From assembly GCA_976226885.1 (NCBI GenBank), contig OZ320314.1, positions 35,836,001-35,900,000 of the forward strand: a stretch of 64,000 bases of DNA, in the 5' to 3' direction. The notes beneath the pieces are model-generated. The model saw only the letters and a list, made by a program, of their open reading frames with translations. It did no database searches and had not been told where the DNA came from. Both the position numbers and the translations under genes were made by a program. The DNA comes from Iphione sp. A-MEVVRFRX5. Its lineage: Eukaryota. Positions 17,301-24,572 of the stretch are shown here, in pieces; the first letter of the stretch is position 1; each line of letters opens with the position of its first letter.

Positions 17301-18071
17301 TTGAAGTGATGATTGTCTGAGGCCGGCATAGTTTTATGACCTCGTGGTGTCGCCATCTAGCTGTCGCGCCGTGGACTACGCGGTATCAATCTTAGGTCTC
17401 TTGCTTCCTCGGGCGTCGGGGATATTTTCAATTCTGACAGAAGATAAACAGTCGCCAAGGCAGGAATACGTCACCGACGTGCCTTGATTGTAGGGCCTGT
17501 TGTGACAGACGAGGGTCGTTGGGGTCAGGCGCTCAGATGGGGGGCGGGGAATTTTCACGGGCTCACACTTGACCTACAGGGTTAAAGAAGGGCACTTTGC
17601 TCCATGAGAAGTAGAGTCGTTCGTGGGGGCATGGGACGATCAGACAGGAACTGTTCCAATACTCCTTCGGGAGACAAGTTCATTAAGATTTATTGATAAG
17701 CGATGTGCAGTGATGAAGCCGAAAGCGTGGTTAGGGTAGGAAGGAAGCGCCAGGCTGCCCAGGCATCATCACAGCCGCTCAGGGTCTGGGCGCAGAGGAG
17801 CACGATAATCTCAGTCCTACTTGCCGGGACATGCCCCCGTGCAATCTCAGGGAGGCTAACAATACGGTACGCATCCCAATTATCCAGATAAGGAAGCCGC
17901 TGGGTCTGATATTTCTGATTTCCTCTGACCTAAAGAATTCCAACCACATTAATATGTTGATTTCGGACTGTATGCGAATGGAATTGAATGTTGTACTTAA
18001 CTGTGATCATTTCGTGAATATATTGGACGATTTCGGGGCATTTGATGTCATTTTTGAAATGATCGAAATGG

Positions 18072-18090
18072 TTTTTTTTTTTTTTTTTTT
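18072..18090 (-). repeat. Poly(A) tail of the LINE (19 uninterrupted T on the plus strand)
   Basis: Direct sequence; 5 nt from the AATAAA on the minus strand. Confidence 0.9.
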
Positions 18091-18095
18091 AAACT

Positions 18096-18101
18096 TTTAT
18101 T
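18096..18101 (-). terminator. Polyadenylation signal AATAAA of the LINE
   Basis: Plus-strand TTTATT adjacent to the poly(T) tract. Confidence 0.75.
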
Positions 18102-18105
18102 TATA

Positions 18106-18125
18106 CTGACCACCACTGGCGTCAG
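18106..18125 (-). other. 3'-terminal stem-loop of the LINE RNA (CUGAC...GUCAG)
   Basis: 5-bp perfect stem, extendable by G-U, C-G and C-G pairs around an AGU loop with one bulged G; directly upstream of AAUAAA. Confidence 0.45.
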
Positions 18126-18188
18126 ATAACGTTACAATTCTTGTATTTCAATCTTAATTACTAAACTATATACATTTATATATACAAT

Positions 18189-18206
18189 ATCAGACCGACG
18201 TCTGAT
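18189..18206 (-). other. 3'UTR hairpin ATCAGAC-4 nt-GTCTGAT
   Basis: Perfect 7-bp inverted repeat with a 4-nt loop in an otherwise AT-rich UTR. Confidence 0.5.
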
Positions 18207-18333
18207 TATACAGAATATTGATAATCATTTGATGGTAGGAGTATGTACACTATATACATAAGAGATTGATTTAAACCATTAATATTGTTTTTTTGTGAGA
18301 CATATCAAAATTTACGGATACATGGTAAACTGT

Positions 18334-21162
18334 TTATGACACTTTCCAGTTCTCTTTGGTTAGACGATGGAATAGTTCCTCCTTTACATTTCTCTTGAAT
18401 TGGTCCTTAACTGGAACCTTCAAACTGTCATTGAGCTTGTTCCAGAAAGATGTTGCCATAAATAAGGGGTCTTTACGATAGCTGCATTTTTTGGGCATCG
18501 TGATAGGTAGGTTGCATTGTCTGAATTTGCTTTTTGATTTTTTTATTTGAAATAGCGGATATAGATATTTGTGATATGTTGACAAGGAAAAATATTCACT
18601 TCTTAACTGTAGTGGCAGAATTCCAACTTCTTTGCAGATAATGTTATAATTCTGTTTGAATTTCCCTGTTGCTAATCTTATTGCCTTTTCTAATTGTTTT
18701 TCTAGTTTTGTAAAGCCGAGTGATGAATAACAGTGGATGGACCCAAGACCGTACTCAAGTATTGGAATAAAATATGTCTTCAAAACTTGAATTGCTATTT
18801 TTCTGTTGATTCTTGCTGATTGGCGAATTGTATTCATTAGTACGCATGATTTCTTCAATTTACTCGAGAGCTCTAGGTTCATATCAAGATTTTGGTCTAG
18901 TATGACTCCAAGATATTTGTAGTGTTCAACGTGGTGAATAGTGTGATTATCTATTGTTATTTCTAGCTTTTTACCATTAGACTTATTTCTTTTGTGACAG
19001 AATAACATGGACTCAGTTTTAGTCATATTCATTCTGATACCATTGATTTTACACCACGTGTTTAATCTATTTGCGTCCTCAGTTAACTTTTCTTCAATAA
19101 ATTGAATATTCTTACCCTCTATTAAAAGTATGGTATCATCAGCATACATAATACTGTGTGCATGCTTTAATGTTAGGATACTGTCGTTGATGAAAAGGCT
19201 AAAGAGGAGGGGGCCTAAAATGCTACCCTGGGGTACGCCTATTGTCATTGGTAGAGGAGACGATATGTGGCTTCCTATTTTGGTAGTAATTGATCTGTTG
19301 GATAGATAGGATCTTATCATTCTCAATTCTGTGGTCATTCCCATTGTGTTCAGTTTTTCTATTAAGATATTATGCTGAATACTATCGAAAGCTTTCTGAT
19401 AGTCTATGAAGAGGGCTCCAACAATGTTGTTTCTGTTAATAGCGTCATGAATATAGTGCAAAACATCATTTAGGGCATCAATGGTGGACTTTCCTTTTCT
19501 GAAACCATATTGTGAGGGTGCAAGTAGATGATTATATTCAACATAGTCTGTTATTTGATTTGAGATAATTCGTTCGAGAATTTTACTCAAAGCCGGCAAA
19601 ATACTGATGGGCCTATACGAGTTAGCGTCATAGAGATTACCTTTGTTTTTGTACAGTGGCGTAATGCAAGCTGATTTCCATGCGATAGGGAAAATTTTTT
19701 GTTCAATACATACATTGATTAAATATGTTAATTCCTGATTAGTCTCCATTAGACATGATTTAAGTATTCTAGTCGTACATTTATCTATTCCAGATGGTTT
19801 AGATTCATTTAAATTTTTAATCAATCTTGAAATGTCTTCATTACTTACCGTGTGTATTACTAGTGGTATTTTACTCACTGTGACAAATTCAGTTATCCAT
19901 GGATGTGTTGGGTTAGATGAAGATTTTCCTATGACAGAGAAATGTTGATTGAACTTGTCGGTTGTATCAGCAGTTGTTAGGACTGTACCGTTTTCTTTCA
20001 AATTCACAGTTGAAGTCTTTTTGCTATATCCTAAAAGCCCCTTGAGAAATTTCCAATATTTTTTGGGATTGTCCTTATTAGTCGAGATTTGGTTGCTTAC
20101 GAAATGAGATTTATCCTCAATAAGAGATTTTTTACTCTCTAAGTTTAATTTACGTGCTTCCATAAATAAAGTTGGGGATTTTAGCATGATTGCCTTTTTG
20201 AACGTAACATTTTTGTGGGTAATTAACGATCTTGTACGTGCTGAGATCCATCTGTCTTGTGTTTGAATGTTCTTGCTTATTTTTAACGGAGATACCTGTT
20301 CTAGAAGATGAATTATAATTTTCTCATAATACGTTGCCATAAAGTCAGGGTCTCTGGATGAGTAAAATGGAGACCAGTCAGCCTTTATTGCAACATGGTG
20401 ATATTTTTGTTGGTGTGAGATTTTCCATGCTCTATAACTGAAGGGCCGTGGCGTATTAGTGATCATCTTTATGTCCAGTTTAATTGATATTGCATGGTGG
20501 TCGCTTAGAAAAGTAGGTATTACTTTAACAGTAGCATTGTTAAATTCTGTAGTAATGATCAGATCAATACAGGAACTAGAATTCGAGCTAAATCTAGTTG
20601 ATGTTTTAACAAGTTGTCTCATATTGAAGTTCATAGATAAATGAAGGAGATTTATTCTATTGCTGTTATTAGTGTCTAGGAAATTAATATTGAAGTCCCC
20701 GATTAAGACTACTCGTTCTCCGTTCTTAATAGTGTGTTCTAAGATTATGTCAAGATGTTCTAGAAATTTGGAAATATTACCCTTAGGAGGTCGATATATA
20801 GTGATTAATACTATGTCACTACCGGATGGTGGGGTAATACTAATAACAGCGATTTCACAATCAATGCAGCTCGTATTGAGAACTTTCCATCTCTCACTGT
20901 CTAGGGGAATTTTGTTATTGTAATAGACTACTATTCCACCGCCTATTCCATATTGTCTGTCCCATCGGAAAACATTATAATTGTGCAGGTTAATCTGTTC
21001 ATTCGAGTCCAAATTGTTTAACCATGATTCTGTGAAAACAAATACATCCGCTATGACGTTACTAAGTAAGTGATTACATTCTAGTAACTTGGATCTTATG
21101 CTGCGTATATTTAAATGAAAGATGGTGAAGAAAGTGTCAAAAGCTACTTGATTGCATGCCAT
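18334..21162 (-). CDS. LINE ORF2: AP endonuclease plus reverse transcriptase (942 aa)
   Basis: APE motifs at aa about 13-228 (20479-21126): HLNIRS, FTESWL, RWDR..GGGIVVY, IYRPP, IGDFNIN, CIDLII, LSDHHAI. RT motifs at aa about 455-756 (18895-19800): YRPISILPALSKILE, QYGFRKGKST, FIDYQKAFDSI, GVPQGSILGPLLF, YADD (19135-19146), YKYLGVILD. No RNase H or C-terminal CCHC knuckle seen, consistent with the CR1/L2 group. ATG context atcATGG. Confidence 0.97.
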   Translation of the reverse strand: MACNQVAFDTFFTIFHLNIRSIRSKLLECNHLLSNVIADVFVFTESWLNNLDSNEQINLHNYNVFRWDRQYGIGGGIVVYYNNKIPLDSERWKVLNTSCIDCEIAVISITPPSGSDIVLITIYRPPKGNISKFLEHLDIILEHTIKNGERVVLIGDFNINFLDTNNSNRINLLHLSMNFNMRQLVKTSTRFSSNSSSCIDLIITTEFNNATVKVIPTFLSDHHAISIKLDIKMITNTPRPFSYRAWKISHQQKYHHVAIKADWSPFYSSRDPDFMATYYEKIIIHLLEQVSPLKISKNIQTQDRWISARTRSLITHKNVTFKKAIMLKSPTLFMEARKLNLESKKSLIEDKSHFVSNQISTNKDNPKKYWKFLKGLLGYSKKTSTVNLKENGTVLTTADTTDKFNQHFSVIGKSSSNPTHPWITEFVTVSKIPLVIHTVSNEDISRLIKNLNESKPSGIDKCTTRILKSCLMETNQELTYLINVCIEQKIFPIAWKSACITPLYKNKGNLYDANSYRPISILPALSKILERIISNQITDYVEYNHLLAPSQYGFRKGKSTIDALNDVLHYIHDAINRNNIVGALFIDYQKAFDSIQHNILIEKLNTMGMTTELRMIRSYLSNRSITTKIGSHISSPLPMTIGVPQGSILGPLLFSLFINDSILTLKHAHSIMYADDTILLIEGKNIQFIEEKLTEDANRLNTWCKINGIRMNMTKTESMLFCHKRNKSNGKKLEITIDNHTIHHVEHYKYLGVILDQNLDMNLELSSKLKKSCVLMNTIRQSARINRKIAIQVLKTYFIPILEYGLGSIHCYSSLGFTKLEKQLEKAIRLATGKFKQNYNIICKEVGILPLQLRSEYFSLSTYHKYLYPLFQIKKSKSKFRQCNLPITMPKKCSYRKDPLFMATSFWNKLNDSLKVPVKDQFKRNVKEELFHRLTKENWKVS

Positions 21163-21282
21163 GATAATGTTTCAAGGAATACATAAAGTATTAGATTTAG
21201 CACAGTCTCAAGACAAAAACAAGAAACAGTATGTACATTTAGCGGCATAAGCAATTCAGAAATCATGCTTACGCAGCTTGAT

Positions 21283-21295
21283 TGGCTGCCGGGGG
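21283..21295. repeat. Spacer arm of a 13-bp perfect inverted repeat (TGGCTGCCGGGGG); partner at 24573-24585
   Basis: Exact reverse complement of CCCCCGGCAGCCA at 24573-24585. Confidence 0.85.
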
Positions 21296-21779
21296 GCAGA
21301 TAACTGAGTAATTGTAGACACATACTTCCACAGATTGTATCTTTATTTCTTGGTTACATAGGAACTCAAGTGGAGTTCAAGCAGTGTGTTTACATCGGTC
21401 TCATTAGTGGAGAACCAGGATGTGGCGTTTGATTATTTCAACTGTGTCTCAAAACGGAGACAATGTGATATTTTTGTAACCAATTGTTCCAGTCATATGG
21501 TCAAATATACATTGATATAGTTAGGTATGCGGGTATAACAATATGCACTCAGTTGGCTAAGATACTGATGTCGACTTAGCAGCAATATAGGGCAAACCAT
21601 AACTTGTCATTTCACACCTTGTCATATGTCATCATTTTAGCATGCATAACGATAGCTAGACATAGTGATACCCTGGTTAGGATATGTCATTATTTCGATA
21701 AGTGTATTTCCTAACATGTATGTGCCGATATCACGTTTCAAGTGTCAATTTTTAAATTTGAGCACTCATGGTAAATCAG

Positions 21780-22487
21780 TTAGATGTTCAATCGTCCTAT
21801 AAATCTCGATAGAGCACTTATCATCTCACGTCGTCCTTGTACGTTCAGATGACAACCGTCACTGTAACGATGAAGCCGATTTGTATCTCGCCCATTAGCA
21901 CGTCCATGAACGATGCAGCCAGTATGAGGTGTCGGTGAGCCATGTAGTCCATTCAATGCCAGGATCTGTCTGTTCACCAGGTGTGCTGCCCGGTTTAGAG
22001 CCCTCTGCGTCTGGTCTACTCTCTGCGTCTGGTCACCAGTCTCTGAAATTACTCCATTGCTCATATTAGCATTGTATCTCATAATGTCAGGGGCCAATAT
22101 CTGAGAAAAGACAATATATGTACTTGGTAGGTAACTAGACAGAGCTTCATACGCATCTTGTACTTTTGCTATGTAGGATTCACAAATAACATACGGATCA
22201 GTGTCGATCGCTGAAATTTGACGTCCACGAGAGCCATCTGGTAACAATGCATTTCGGTTTAGTTTTGTAATATCATTGGTACCTACCAGAAGGACGAGAT
22301 AAATTGGTGCATCTGTGAAAACAAATGATAGTATCTCATGTACTAGCCTTGATACTGTCGCTCCTGGGAATATATGAAAAGGACAGTTTAGACCATTGCG
22401 CAAAAGTCCACGATGGAGATTTCTTCCATGTGAATCGCAGAAGAAATGTATTGGTAATGGAAGTGAATCAGGGTCTACCTCTAACAT
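21780..22487 (-). CDS. SGNH/GDSL hydrolase (esterase) ORF of the LINE (235 aa)
   Basis: All four SGNH blocks in order: FFCDSH (GDS-like, catalytic Ser), FPGAT (Gly), VGTND (Asn), DGCHL (DxxH). SGNH esterases are established components of ORF1 in some CR1/L2/RTEX elements. Confidence 0.9.
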   Translation of the reverse strand: MLEVDPDSLPLPIHFFCDSHGRNLHRGLLRNGLNCPFHIFPGATVSRLVHEILSFVFTDAPIYLVLLVGTNDITKLNRNALLPDGSRGRQISAIDTDPYVICESYIAKVQDAYEALSSYLPSTYIVFSQILAPDIMRYNANMSNGVISETGDQTQRVDQTQRALNRAAHLVNRQILALNGLHGSPTPHTGCIVHGRANGRDTNRLHRYSDGCHLNVQGRREMISALSRFIGRLNI

Positions 22488-22490
22488 TTC

Positions 22491-24404
22491 TCACTGTGTG
22501 ACTGTAGACTGTCTGAGCTTGGATCTAACCTTTTCAAGAATTTGACCTAACCAGTTGCTACCTGGGTATTCCGAGCGTGTCGAGCTGAAGTTACGTAGTG
22601 ACACGCCCAGCCCCCACCTGTTGTCCAATGAGGCCTCGAGCAGTCTTAGTTCGCCAGTTGCGAGCAGAGATTTCTGCACTGATTGACATTGGCCAAATTT
22701 AGCATCAAGAATATCACTCATTGTTTGTTGGGTCATCTGGTCAGTCCATGGATTCGCCTCATTGAGGGCCTTTGTCCTGCGGGGAATAGCAGTTGGGTCG
22801 TCAATGTGCATAATGTCATTAGCTAGGCTTGTCAGTCCAGCAGCTAGAGCCTTCGTCGCCTTATACGCCTGTTCCACCGAGTTGTATTTCACACCCTTAT
22901 ACTCAAAGGCACTTAGATGCATGTTCGAGAGCGGGTGATTCTTGCCATAGAATGCGAGACAATTATCATCTCTTTTCTCAGACGCCTTTTCTAGGGTCAG
23001 TCCAGGGGGTAGTCGGTGCAGGGTCCTTGTCGTGTATGAATTGCCGTCGATTGTTAGTTTGTCACCCTCCAATCTTGCATTACAACGTAATGATTTGGCT
23101 AAGTGGAATACACTTCGCAGTTCACCTCTCTGAACCCTGTCTGTTTCTGATAAGTCCTCATTCACCCAAACACCCCTTATCGTTTTCAGATTACCCCTGC
23201 CAAACAATATACGGGCCCTTGTGCTCTGTTTAGCAAATTTAATTTTGATATCTCGAGTCTTCCTGTCAGTCTTTTGTCCTAGTCGATAGCAGTAATCCAT
23301 GTTGTATGGAGAGAATAATGGATCCGCCATTGACAGTATTTCGCAAACCCTGTCCCATAGGCGTTGAGGTGTTTCACCGCCTTCCTCACATAACCCTGAT
23401 ATAATTAGGTTTGATTGCTTGTTTTCTCTTTCTAAACGATCAATTTGATTTCTCATGGCACGTAGCTCAGCATTTGTTTGTGTGCTGTGTAGTGTACCCG
23501 TACCACCCGAGATTCTTATTTCTGCTATTTTCGCCTTTAGTTCTGCATTTTGAGCCTCAAGTTCACTGATCCTGTTATTTTGTGCCTCAATAGAGTTGAT
23601 TGCATGTTTGATTTGATCACTGTTAGCTTTCATGCCAGCATTAAAGGTTGTGTTCATACTCTTTGTTTCCTCAATATGTGAGTTGATCATTTCTGATAAT
23701 CCCTTTATTGTTGTGTTAAGATCTGATTTAAGCTCAGCAAACATACCGTGCATCAGGATAGTCCCTGTTCCATCAGTGGGACTGGAACATTTTACTTCCT
23801 TTAGGAAACTGAGTATATCGTCATGGTGGTAGTCAGGTGGGCCGTCACTAGTCACTGGTGAGAAGTCTCTTGCTTTTTTGAGATCAGGATTCTCCACAAT
23901 CGGACTGATATCCTTTCTCTTAAAATTTGTTGCTGGGGTTGCAGTAATTGAGATATCAGTTTGTGTCTGGATTTCCCTAAGATTGATCGAGTCATTGTGA
24001 GTAGTGCACGGAGCGGACACTGTAATCAGACTACCTGCCTGTGTGTCGTTTCTGTATGCAGTCAGAGTGTCGGAACCTATGTTTGTCTTTTTAGCAACAA
24101 CGGTATTTGGGGTTGATAGAGTAGGTATGTCTGCTTTCTGTGGAGTGTTGTAACCGTCGGGTCGAGTATCAGTGTCAGATATTATTCTGGTTGGTTTGTT
24201 AGTTAGTACCTCGTCTATGTTGCCATTTGTATTTCCCAAAAATGTCTTATTGTCTGTTTTCTGAGAGGTGAGATTATTTTCAGGTCGAGTGTCTTTGTCA
24301 AGTAATATTTTTGTTGGTTTTGTAGCCAGAACTTCGTCAGCATAGTCAAGCGCCGCTGTTAGCGAGGCCTCAATCAGTATGCTCTCGTCCTGAAACAAGC
24401 TCAT
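22491..24404 (-). CDS. LINE ORF1 (637 aa): N-terminal repeats, coiled coil, L1-type RRM/CTD and C-terminal NADAR domain
   Basis: The track ORF opens at a TTG (24464); the first in-frame ATG is 24404 (aaaATGa). Coiled coil at about 23421-23741 (IEAQNNRISELEAQNAELKAKIAEI). RRM/CTD-like motifs at about 23034-23435 (SNLIISGL, YRLGQK, IKIKF, VWVNEDLS, GDKLTIDG). NADAR motifs at 22512-22958. Confidence 0.9.
   Translation of the reverse strand: MSLFQDESILIEASLTAALDYADEVLATKPTKILLDKDTRPENNLTSQKTDNKTFLGNTNGNIDEVLTNKPTRIISDTDTRPDGYNTPQKADIPTLSTPNTVVAKKTNIGSDTLTAYRNDTQAGSLITVSAPCTTHNDSINLREIQTQTDISITATPATNFKRKDISPIVENPDLKKARDFSPVTSDGPPDYHHDDILSFLKEVKCSSPTDGTGTILMHGMFAELKSDLNTTIKGLSEMINSHIEETKSMNTTFNAGMKANSDQIKHAINSIEAQNNRISELEAQNAELKAKIAEIRISGGTGTLHSTQTNAELRAMRNQIDRLERENKQSNLIISGLCEEGGETPQRLWDRVCEILSMADPLFSPYNMDYCYRLGQKTDRKTRDIKIKFAKQSTRARILFGRGNLKTIRGVWVNEDLSETDRVQRGELRSVFHLAKSLRCNARLEGDKLTIDGNSYTTRTLHRLPPGLTLEKASEKRDDNCLAFYGKNHPLSNMHLSAFEYKGVKYNSVEQAYKATKALAAGLTSLANDIMHIDDPTAIPRRTKALNEANPWTDQMTQQTMSDILDAKFGQCQSVQKSLLATGELRLLEASLDNRWGLGVSLRNFSSTRSEYPGSNWLGQILEKVRSKLRQSTVTQ
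22512..22958 (-). other. NADAR (YbiA/DUF1768-like) domain at the ORF1 C-terminus
   Basis: Motifs FYG..PLSN, GVKYNSVEQAYKATK, AKF, LLATG..LLEAS.DNRWG.G and GSNWLGQILEKVR match, in order and spacing, the NADAR family pattern as I recall it from E. coli YbiA (FY..FSNF..SEHYFQAQK..AKF..LLAT..LVE..D.YWG..GKNRLG.LLM.LR). Confidence 0.88.
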
Positions 24405-24572
24405 TTTCGCCCATCTGTAGTGCCGTGCTAAGAAAAGTCGATAAATACACTCAAAATACAGCAAAACAGTATTTAGTATACAACACAGTGACAGGGATAG
24501 ATATTACCTTCAATGTTTCCACAATTGTAGGTTGAGTGTCCGTGTTGTAGAGCTTATTTAGTGTCTGTCGTT

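What the first reader, a model, noticed from the sequence alone, without database searches (positions are those of the whole stretch)
22491..24404. LINE ORF1 protein fused to a NADAR (putative ADP-ribosyl-hydrolase) domain
Seen: the last ~150 aa of an otherwise typical coiled-coil/RRM/CTD ORF1 carry the full ordered NADAR motif set, including the Glu of VEQ, the Lys of ATK and AKF, and the Glu and Asp of LLEAS.DNRWG. It differs from YbiA at Q->K in EQAYK and in a divergent A.R.GR helix. Established: NADAR proteins include the YbiA/RibX N-glycosidases and the DarT1 antitoxins that remove ADP-ribose from guanine in DNA. NADARs also occur in phages and some RNA viruses. Animals have guanine-specific DNA ARTs (pierisins, clam CARP-1), and PARP activity is engaged at L1 TPRT sites. 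The usual ORF1 accessory domains are RRM, CCHC, PHD and esterase; I do not know NADAR as a described one. Inference: the element puts many copies of a de-ADP-ribosylating enzyme on its RNP, either as counter-defence against host ADP-ribosylation or to clean modified nucleic acid at the insertion site. Related proteins may already sit in databases as uncharacterised, so novelty needs checking.
Basis: partly seen in the sequence, partly recalled or inferred. Interest (0 to 1): 0.92.

Follow-up and report, generated by a model that had tools for sequence, protein, structure and literature searches.

The report
LINE retrotransposon ORF1 carrying NADAR hydrolase
An intact-looking jumping gene (a LINE) has, on the end of its RNA-packaging protein, an enzyme domain of the kind known to strip ADP-ribose off DNA and RNA bases. 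The fusion is real, old and kept by selection in many related elements, but it was noted briefly in a 2025 paper and its function is untested.

Summary
On the minus strand, ORF1 (22491-24404) ends in a full NADAR domain: Pfam PF08719 scores 83.8 bits against a cut-off of 35.1. An AlphaFold2 model (pLDDT 96) matches the Phytophthora NADAR structure 8BAU, E. coli YbiA, and the RRM-CTD of human LINE-1 ORF1p.

All catalytic residues defined experimentally for NADARs are present: E531, K538, E610, D614 and W617.

This is not a one-off. 98 of the 150 best NADAR relatives in a library of 1.84 billion proteins carry the same RRM-CTD in front of the NADAR. Several were shown to sit upstream of APE-RT ORFs. 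The two closest relatives of this element's reverse transcriptase, found without using NADAR, have the same layout. Catalytic residues are nearly invariant, and nonsynonymous divergence in NADAR is as low as in the RRM-CTD.

An SGNH/GDSL-fold esterase ORF (21780-22487) lies between ORF1 and ORF2 and is conserved in this lineage.

Novelty is reduced. PMC12477816 (2025) already notes NADAR domains in ORF1 of oyster LINEs.

The parts
18072..18090 (-). Poly(A) tail of 19 A, the 3' end of the element. It is preceded by AATAAA at 18096-18101.
18091..18333 (-). 3' UTR
18334..21162 (-). ORF2, 942 aa. Apurinic-type endonuclease at aa 18-225 and reverse transcriptase at aa 508-755. No C-terminal CCHC.
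   Evidence: Pfam PF03372/PF14529/PF00078. Best database relatives are 31% identical. PDB L1 ORF2p scores only E 4e-17, about the same as R2.
21163..21779 (-). 617-nt spacer with no ORF, between the esterase ORF and ORF2
   Evidence: Comparable spacers are present in L001, L009 and L010.
21780..22487 (-). ORF1b, 235 aa, an SGNH/GDSL-fold esterase. Motifs: DSHG (block I), GTND (block III), DGCH (block V).
   Evidence: Pfam GDSL_2 E 9.5e-4, below its cut-off. AF2 model pLDDT 81. Foldseek gives 107 PDB matches at E<=1e-3 to GDSL lipases and PAF acetylhydrolase. A homologous ORF follows ORF1-NADAR in L001, L002, L006-L011.
22491..24404 (-). ORF1 from its first ATG (637 aa plus stop). The frame is open upstream to a TTG at 24464 (657-aa numbering).
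22512..22949 (-). NADAR domain, YbiA subfamily (aa 506-651). The E531 codon is at 22872-22874 and the E610 codon at 22635-22637.
22980..23399 (-). RRM plus CTD of L1-type (Type II) ORF1p (aa 356-495)
   Evidence: AF2 model pLDDT 96. Foldseek to 2YKO/2YKP/2LDY, probability 1.00.
23400..23729 (-). Probable coiled coil (aa about 246-355)
   Evidence: Weak Pfam/NCBIfam coiled-coil family matches. Collinear with the matching region of the L009 ORF1.
23730..24404 (-). N-terminal low-complexity region with an internal duplication of about 35 aa. No domain found.

Best explanation
Window 18072 to at least 24464 (minus strand) is a full-length non-LTR retrotransposon with all three ORFs open. The ORFs are:
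- ORF1p: disordered N-terminus, coiled coil, RRM, CTD, NADAR.
- ORF1b: an SGNH esterase.
- ORF2p: APE endonuclease plus RT.

The NADAR is a YbiA-subfamily ADP-ribosyl N-glycohydrolase domain with a complete catalytic set. It is an inherited, selected part of a large and old LINE lineage.

Most likely mechanism: ORF1p coats the element's RNA as a coiled-coil multimer, so many NADAR active sites are held against the RNA, the nascent cDNA and the nicked target. There they hydrolyse ADP-ribose from nucleobases (N2-guanine, possibly cytosine) that would otherwise block translation, reverse transcription or integration. This protects the element from host nucleic-acid ADP-ribosyltransferases.

Shown: domain identity, fold, conserved catalytic residues, linkage to APE-RT elements, purifying selection.

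Inferred: that the domain is active, that its substrate is ADP-ribosylated nucleic acid, and that the benefit is counter-defence.
For: Identity and fold:
- Pfam 83.8 bits.
- Foldseek 8BAU E 8.4e-9 and YbiA 2B3W E 1.4e-7, on a model of pLDDT 96.

Catalytic residues across 54 ORF1-NADAR proteins that are about 30% identical:
- E531: 54/54
- K538: 43 K plus 7 R
- E610: 53/54
- D614: 49/54
- W617: 53/54
Their roles were defined by structure and mutagenesis in PMC11543638.

Family breadth and linkage:
- An RRM-CTD profile hits 98 of the 150 best NADAR representatives.
- NADAR-ORF1 lies directly upstream of APE-RT ORFs in L001, L004, L008 and the loci of P0110 and P0007.
- P0110 occurs as 5 identical copies in one assembly.
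- RT-first test: the two closest ORF2 relatives (P0162, P0163) both have NADAR-ORF1 plus the SGNH ORF upstream.

Selection: in a 52%-identical pair, synonymous sites are saturated (pS 0.77). dN is 0.27 for NADAR, 0.26 for RRM-CTD, 0.54 for the N-terminus and 1.05 for the C-terminal tail.

Known activity of relatives: eukaryotic NADARs not associated with DarT (Phytophthora), YbiA-type NADARs and a sponge NADAR remove ADP-ribose from guanine or cytidine in DNA and RNA (PMC11543638, PMC11125620, PMC12945103).

Parallel: the NADAR fold sits in the replicase polyproteins of invertebrate RNA viruses.
Against: - No biochemical or genetic data exist for any LINE NADAR.
- This copy departs from the family consensus at Q535K and in the phosphate/adenine-binding loop (PRRTK instead of KRxGK). 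The segment aligned to the adenine-stacking Y84 of 8BAU is gapped, so ADP-ribose binding in this copy is not assured.
- No ADP-ribosyltransferase was looked for or found in the host, because the host genome is not available.
- YbiA itself is a small-molecule N-glycosidase, so a substrate other than nucleic acid is possible.
- The 54 sequences were chosen by NADAR similarity to the query. This inflates NADAR conservation relative to RRM-CTD. It does not affect.
- The NADAR tree is poorly resolved. RRM-linked NADARs interleave with multi-NADAR proteins, so a single capture is not shown.
Confidence: 0.5

Rival explanations
1. The NADAR is an active hydrolase, but its substrate is not a modified nucleobase. 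Candidates are ADP-ribosylated protein (for example ORF1p or ORF2p modified by host PARPs), free NAD/ADP-ribose-derived metabolites, or an RNA-end adduct formed during RNA processing, as de Souza and Aravind originally proposed for the family.
For: The catalytic residues are conserved as above. E. coli YbiA and plant NADARs cleave small-molecule N-glycosides (PMC11543638 introduction). PMC12477816 suggests RNA processing. A coilin-NADAR fusion (P0071) hints at a link with nuclear RNP processing.
Against: Every NADAR tested so far, including YbiA-type and eukaryotic ones, is active on base-linked ADP-ribose in nucleic acids. Tethering to an RRM protein argues for a nucleic-acid substrate. No NADAR is known to remove protein-linked ADP-ribose.
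Confidence: 0.2
2. The NADAR and the neighbouring SGNH esterase act as a two-enzyme module on one class of substrate, for example acylated ADP-ribose derivatives or a modified lipid or nucleotide. They would not be two independent accessories.
For: The SGNH ORF follows NADAR-ORF1 within 3-90 nt in the window, L001, L008, L009 and L010, and is also present in L002, L006/L007 and L011. The catalytic Ser and the Asp-x-x-His motif are conserved.
Against: The elements of P0110 and P0094 have NADAR-ORF1 but no detectable SGNH ORF. LINE esterases occur without NADAR in vertebrate CR1/L2 elements and are thought to bind lipids (PMC3905857, PMC4120745). No chemistry linking the two enzymes is known.
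Confidence: 0.1
3. The NADAR serves as a non-catalytic binding module. It would read ADP-ribose or poly(ADP-ribose) and steer the RNP to PARP-marked DNA breaks or condensates.
For: The ADP-ribose-contacting residues (K538, D614, W617) are conserved. PARP activity at L1 integration sites is known from the literature (my own knowledge, not checked here).
Against: The two catalytic glutamates, which are not needed for binding alone, are conserved in 54/54 and 53/54 sequences. No NADAR is known to act as a reader.
Confidence: 0.1
4. The domain is a recent accidental capture or an annotation or assembly artefact. It would be neutral or decaying and have no role in the element.
For: Only one copy lies in the 64-kb window, and no target-site duplication was found.
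Against: The same architecture occurs in about 98 clusters at 50% identity, and also in the nearest RT relatives. Catalytic residues are conserved and dN is much lower than dS.
Confidence: 0.02

Closest known systems
NADAR-containing ORF1 proteins of Crassostrea gigas 'Tx1' LINE families in Repbase (noted in PMC12477816, Genome Biol 2025)
   Same: A YbiA-family NADAR domain inside a LINE ORF1 protein of an invertebrate. No function has been tested.
   Different: They are labelled Tx1. This element's ORF2 has no C-terminal CCHC, is only 942 aa long and is no closer to L1 ORF2p than to R2 in PDB searches. It may therefore belong to another clade. That paper does not describe the SGNH ORF, family size or selection.
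Human LINE-1 ORF1p (Type II ORF1p: coiled coil, RRM, CTD; PDB 2YKO, 2LDY)
   Same: The RRM-CTD fold (Foldseek probability 1.00), a coiled coil in front of it, and a position upstream of an APE-RT ORF.
   Different: There is no sequence-level match to Pfam Transposase_22. A 150-aa enzyme domain is appended after the CTD. The RT is not of the L1 clade by similarity.
P. nicotianae NADAR (8BAU) and E. coli YbiA (2B3W), YbiA subfamily of the NADAR superfamily
   Same: The fold, and the E/K/E/D/W active-site set, including the subfamily-defining Glu in the last strand.
   Different: Those proteins are free-standing. Here the domain is the C-terminus of an RNA-binding retrotransposon protein. The adenine/phosphate loop is shorter and diverged (PRRTK).
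DarT1-associated NADAR antitoxins (DarTG1) and phage orphan NADARs
   Same: An eraser of base ADP-ribosylation carried by a mobile or selfish element. This is the likely logic here, as counter-defence.
   Different: The DarT1-type catalytic Asp (D171) is absent, and the YbiA-type Glu is used instead. There is no partner ADP-ribosyltransferase in the element. The host is eukaryotic.
Esterase-type (Type IV) ORF1p of vertebrate CR1/L2 LINEs (ZfL2-1; PMC3905857)
   Same: An SGNH-fold esterase encoded upstream of ORF2 in a LINE.
   Different: Here it is a separate ORF downstream of a Type II ORF1, not the ORF1 itself. In PMC4120745 the esterase type was found only in vertebrate subgroups. Direct homology to the ZfL2 esterase was not tested.
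Viral macrodomains (coronavirus Mac1, alphavirus nsP3) and NADAR domains in invertebrate nidovirus replicases
   Same: A de-ADP-ribosylating domain built into the replication machinery of an RNA-based replicon (for the viral NADAR folds).
   Different: A macrodomain is a different fold and acts on protein ADP-ribose. The viral NADARs are also uncharacterised.

Membership tests
NADAR superfamily (Pfam PF08719) | Sequence match above the curated threshold over the whole domain | tested here: met
   83.8 bits against 35.1, profile 3-163 of 163. TIGR02464 scores 80.9 against 73.7.
NADAR superfamily (Pfam PF08719) | YbiA-like alpha-helical core fold | tested here: met
   AF2 model pLDDT 96.1. Foldseek 8BAU E 8.4e-9 (TM 0.68) and 2B3W E 1.4e-7 (TM 0.73).
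NADAR superfamily (Pfam PF08719) | Catalytic Glu and Lys of the first helix (E43/K50 in PnNADAR; E88/K95 in E. coli C7 NADAR) | tested here: met
   E531 and K538, spaced by 7 residues.
NADAR superfamily (Pfam PF08719) | ADP-ribosyl N-glycohydrolase activity | not testable with these tools
   Needs an enzyme assay.
YbiA subfamily of NADAR | Glu, not Asp or His, in the last beta strand (E125 of PnNADAR) | tested here: met
   E610 in LLEAS aligns to E125. D614 and W617 align to D130 and W133.
YbiA subfamily of NADAR | Intact adenine/pyrophosphate loop (K75, G78, R79, Y84, D86, W89, R93 of PnNADAR) | tested here: inconclusive
   W573 is conserved. The loop reads PRRTK, against the family's KRxGK. 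The Y84 segment is gapped in the alignment.
DarT1-associated NADAR antitoxin (BC4488 family) | Catalytic Asp two residues before the conserved Glu (D171), and an adjacent DarT1 gene | tested here: not met
   The residue at that position is Leu (LRLLEAS). No ART gene lies in the element.
Type II (L1-like) ORF1p | RRM followed by the CTD fold | tested here: met
   Foldseek 2YKO/2YKP/2YKQ/2LDY, probability 1.00, E 1.6e-3 to 5.5e-3.
Type II (L1-like) ORF1p | Coiled coil N-terminal of the RRM | tested here: inconclusive
   Only weak coiled-coil family matches at aa 246-358 (CdvA E 2.6e-4, SMC, Rad50). No dedicated predictor was run.
Type II (L1-like) ORF1p | Sequence membership of Pfam Transposase_22 (PF02994) | tested here: not met
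   No hit at E<=0.1. The relation rests on fold only.
Autonomous APE-type LINE | APE endonuclease plus RT in an ORF downstream of ORF1, and a 3' poly(A) | tested here: met
   PF03372/PF14529 and PF00078 in an intact 942-aa ORF. AATAAA plus A19.
Autonomous APE-type LINE | Target-site duplication flanking the insertion | tested here: not met
   No match of 8 nt or more between the 3' flank and 2 kb upstream of ORF1. The 5' end is not defined.
L1/Tx1 clade (by RT) | RT much closer to L1 than to other clades, and a C-terminal CCHC motif | tested here: inconclusive
   L1 ORF2p E 4e-17 against R2 E 8.6e-17. No CCHC in the C-terminus. A named relative is 'transposon BS'. No reference RT set was available for a clade tree.
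SGNH/GDSL hydrolase (ORF1b) | SGNH fold with block I Ser, block III Asn and block V Asp-x-x-His | tested here: met
   Foldseek gives 107 matches at E<=1e-3. Motifs DSHG, GTND and DGCH. Pfam GDSL_2 scores only 20.1 bits, below its cut-off of 32.9.

The most novel reading that the evidence does not exclude
ADP-ribosylation of nucleobases in RNA or DNA is a widespread innate defence of invertebrates, and of some algae, against retroelements and RNA viruses. NADAR erasers would then have been recruited independently by this three-ORF LINE lineage, by an Ectocarpus Gypsy lineage and by invertebrate nidovirus replicases, as the counterpart of viral macrodomains in vertebrates. Within the LINE, NADAR and the SGNH esterase could form a dedicated 'de-modification' module on the RNP.
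Probability: 0.2. Interest if true: 0.85.

Novelty: new member of a known kind. Interest (0 to 1): 0.6.

Why it matters
The physiological roles of eukaryotic NADARs are unknown, an open question stated in PMC11125620. [quoted passage not shown]

A large, selectively maintained family of animal retrotransposons that tethers a NADAR to its RNA-packaging protein gives a concrete eukaryotic setting in which to test whether this modification restricts selfish genetic elements.

It also adds an enzymatic accessory domain, plus a conserved separate esterase gene, to the known range of LINE ORF1 architectures. The idea is directly testable with standard enzyme and retrotransposition reporter assays.

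Tried and rejected
- The two word-indexed homologue searches for NADAR-ORF1 gave essentially nothing. One used the NADAR region within the full ORF1 and one used the 54-sequence profile. Relatives are at most about 45% identical, and the exhaustive phmmer search was what found them.
- Taxon names: three cluster look-ups returned no organism for any RRM-NADAR protein. Only Haliotis rufescens was named, for a multi-NADAR protein. The host range of the family is therefore not established here.
- dN/dS on close copies was impossible, because cluster mates differ by 1-3 residues. On the 52%-identical L002 pair, dS is saturated, so only dN comparisons and an upper-bound argument are given.
- Target-site duplication and 5' end: not found.
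- Stop-codon read-through fusing NADAR to the esterase: considered, because TGA-GAA-ATG is in frame here. Rejected as a general design, because the SGNH ORF is in a different frame in L001, L008, L009 and L010.
- C-terminal extensions after NADAR in relatives are low-complexity tails, not esterase.
- Single origin of the ORF1 NADAR: the tree backbone is unresolved and the careful search did not finish. RRM-linked NADARs cluster (23 changes against 41.8 in shuffles) but are not one clade.
- RT clade assignment: no reference LINE RT set was available. PDB and source names give only hints.
- Other features: Rfam, tRNA and tandem-repeat scans of the window found nothing else.
Full report
**Anatomy of the element**

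The only long ORFs in the 64-kb window are three consecutive ORFs on the minus strand:
- ORF1, 22491..24464.
- A 235-aa ORF, 21780..22487.
- ORF2, 18334..21162, 942 aa.

ORF2 has an apurinic-type endonuclease (PF03372, PF14529) and a reverse transcriptase (PF00078). About 240 nt downstream of ORF2 there is AATAAA followed by a pure A19 tract at 18090..18072. The element is AT-richer than its flanks. No second copy lies in the window, and no target-site duplication was found, so the 5' end is undefined. With all three ORFs open and a clean poly(A), the copy looks young.

ORF1 aa 506-651 match Pfam NADAR over the whole profile (E 2.1e-23, 83.8 bits, cut-off 35.1) and TIGR02464.

I aligned 54 related RRM-CTD-NADAR segments and predicted the structure of aa 356-657. 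The mean pLDDT is 96.1 and pTM is 0.88. Foldseek against the PDB returns three groups of matches, all at probability 1.00:
- P. nicotianae NADAR with ADP-ribose (8BAU, E 8.4e-9).
- E. coli YbiA (2B3W, E 1.4e-7).
- The human LINE-1 ORF1p trimer and its RRM-CTD (2YKO, 2YKP, 2YKQ, 2LDY; E from 1.6e-3).

So the protein is an L1-type (Type II) ORF1p with a NADAR appended after the CTD. The coiled coil in front of the RRM is supported only by weak matches to coiled-coil families.

**Active site**

Schuller et al. (PMC11543638) give the roles of the key residues in the 8BAU complex:
- E43 and E125 hold the distal ribose. E125 defines the YbiA subfamily.
- K50, D130 and W133 contact the adenine and pyrophosphate.
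- Mutation of the E43 and K50 equivalents, and of the residue at the E125 position, abolishes guanine de-ADP-ribosylation.

The phmmer alignment to 8BAU and the sequence place E531, K538, E610, D614 and W617 at these positions. The DarT1-type Asp is absent, so this is a YbiA-type NADAR and not an antitoxin-type one.

This copy deviates from its own family in three ways. Q535 is K. The KRxGK loop is PRRTK. The stretch aligned to the adenine-stacking Tyr of 8BAU is gapped.

**It is a family, not an accident**

An exhaustive phmmer search with the NADAR domain against 1.84 billion representatives gave 4692 hits. The best 150 are at most about 45% identical. How many of those 150 carry the RRM-CTD immediately N-terminal of the NADAR:
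- 75 by single-sequence search with this ORF1's RRM-CTD.
- 98 by an RRM-CTD profile.

Each representative stands for a cluster at 50% identity, so the architecture is highly diversified.

Genomic context confirms these are LINEs:
- L001 has NADAR-ORF1, then a 207-aa called gene (a 212-aa ORF from its first ATG), then APE and RT.
- P0110 occurs as five identical copies in one assembly. The four places shown are each followed by a 964-aa APE-RT ORF.
- P0007, P0094 and P0060 are likewise followed by RT ORFs.

As an independent test I started from ORF2. Its two closest database relatives (31% and 29% identity) were found without any reference to NADAR. Both have a NADAR ORF and a roughly 220-240-aa ORF upstream. 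The L009 ORF1 is collinear with the window ORF1 through coiled coil, RRM, CTD and NADAR (27% identity, E 3e-40). The architecture therefore travels with the RT lineage.

**Selection**

Across the 54 aligned proteins:
- E531, S513 and N514 are invariant.
- K538 is K or R in 50.
- K589, E610 and W617 are conserved in 53.
- D614 is conserved in 49.

Mean pairwise identity is 34.7% in NADAR and 25.3% in RRM-CTD. One caveat applies: the set was chosen by NADAR similarity, which favours NADAR in that comparison.

In two ORF1 genes on one contig (L002, 52% identical), synonymous sites are saturated (pS 0.77). dN is 0.27 in NADAR, 0.26 in RRM-CTD, 0.54 in the N-terminal part and 1.05 in the C-terminal tail. 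NADAR is thus as constrained as the RNA-binding core.

**The third gene**

The 235-aa ORF begins three bases after the ORF1 stop (TGA GAA ATG).
- Pfam GDSL_2 is sub-threshold (E 9.5e-4).
- The AF2 model (pLDDT 81) has 107 PDB matches at E<=1e-3, all to GDSL/SGNH hydrolases, including PAF acetylhydrolase.
- The DSxG, GxND and DGxH blocks are present.

A profile of this ORF detects homologues directly downstream of NADAR-ORF1 in L001, L002/L003, L006/L007 and L008. It also detects them in L009, L010 and L011, which were not used to build the profile (E 7e-34, 8e-38 and 2e-25).

In L001, L008, L009 and L010 the ORF is in a different frame from ORF1. It is therefore a separate cistron and not a read-through extension. 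The elements of P0110 and P0094 lack it.

**Clade**

The RT is not close to L1. PDB L1 ORF2p scores E 4e-17 and R2 scores 8.6e-17. There is no C-terminal CCHC, and a named relative is annotated after the Jockey-clade element BS. The C-terminal 'FWNKL...FK' motif resembles the CR1/L2/Jockey-type ORF2 terminus, but that is from my memory and was not tested here.

Type II ORF1 is known in the L1, CR1, L2 and R1 clades. The esterase type was previously seen only in vertebrate CR1/L2 subgroups (PMC4120745). I could not build a reference RT tree, so the clade stays open. This matters for the comparison with the 'Tx1' label in the literature.

**What is already known**

A full-text search found one prior statement. 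PMC12477816 (Genome Biology 2025) describes a NADAR at the N-terminus of Pol in an Ectocarpus Gypsy lineage. [quoted passage not shown]

So NADAR in a LINE ORF1 is not new as an observation. What is added here:
- the size and age of the family;
- conservation of the catalytic set and purifying selection;
- the Type II ORF1p fold context;
- the conserved SGNH cistron.

**Mechanism**

Known NADARs, including eukaryotic, YbiA-type and sponge enzymes, hydrolyse ADP-ribose from guanine N2 and from cytidine in DNA and RNA. Phage NADARs are thought to protect phage DNA from host ARTs.

Tethered to a multimeric RNA-coating protein, the domain would most plausibly erase base ADP-ribosylation on the LINE RNA, its cDNA or the target site. 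Foldseek against viral models shows the same fold inside replicase polyproteins of invertebrate RNA viruses: yellow head virus, gill-associated virus and Wenling nido-like virus 1. This fits a counter-defence reading.

All of this is inference. Activity, substrate and benefit are untested. Rivals remain open: a substrate other than nucleic acid, a joint function with the esterase, or a reader role.

The NADAR tree is too poorly resolved to say whether LINEs captured the domain once, or how the multi-NADAR animal proteins (for example Haliotis XP_048255699.1) relate to them.

**Verdict**

The structural interpretation is supported, and the functional interpretation is plausible but unproven. 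Novelty is moderate because of the 2025 mention. Interest remains fairly high, because the family offers a tractable eukaryotic system for nucleic-acid ADP-ribosylation.

Noticed in passing
window 21780-22487 (minus strand): A separate SGNH/GDSL-fold esterase ORF lies between the NADAR-ORF1 and ORF2. It starts 3 nt after the ORF1 stop and is in frame with it. It is conserved in related elements, where it is in other frames. In the relatives the block III Asn is Cys (GICD); this copy has GTND.
   Followed up: yes
P0071 (protein from a 2976-bp JGI metagenome contig): A 972-aa protein with a Coilin N-terminus, a Coilin Tudor domain and a C-terminal NADAR. Its NADAR is among the closest relatives of the LINE NADARs. 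It appears to be a coilin-NADAR fusion.
   Followed up: no
P0001 (Haliotis rufescens XP_048255699.1) and 15 other representatives: Giant or medium-sized proteins made of 2-7 tandem NADAR domains with no RRM. In the tree they interleave with the LINE NADARs. It is unclear whether they are host genes or derived from transposable elements.
   Followed up: partly
L002 317-2887 and 4188-6386 (also L003): Two ORF1-NADAR plus SGNH units, 52% identical, lie 3.9 kb apart on one contig with no ORF2 between them. The SGNH ORF of the first unit is frameshifted. This may be nested or truncated elements, or a non-autonomous arrangement.
   Followed up: partly
BFVD matches to the ORF1 model: The NADAR fold is embedded in replicase polyproteins of invertebrate RNA viruses (yellow head virus, gill-associated virus, Wenling nido-like virus 1, Ingleside virus RdRp), as well as in phages and giant viruses.
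   Followed up: no
window 24100-24350 (minus strand; ORF1 aa about 40-125): An internal duplication of about 35 aa in the disordered N-terminus of ORF1p (EVLATKPTKILLDKDTRPENN... and EVLTNKPTRIISDTDTRPDGY...).
   Followed up: no
window 18000-22000 compared with the flanks: The ORF2 part of the element has 33-37% G+C, against 45-50% in the flanking sequence. No other ORF of 170 aa or more, tRNA, Rfam match or strong tandem repeat occurs anywhere in the 64 kb.
   Followed up: partly
L001 588-3023 (minus strand): A gene for a THAP9/P-element-like transposase (TNP-like RNaseH and GBD domains) lies 5 kb upstream of the related NADAR-LINE in that assembly.
   Followed up: no
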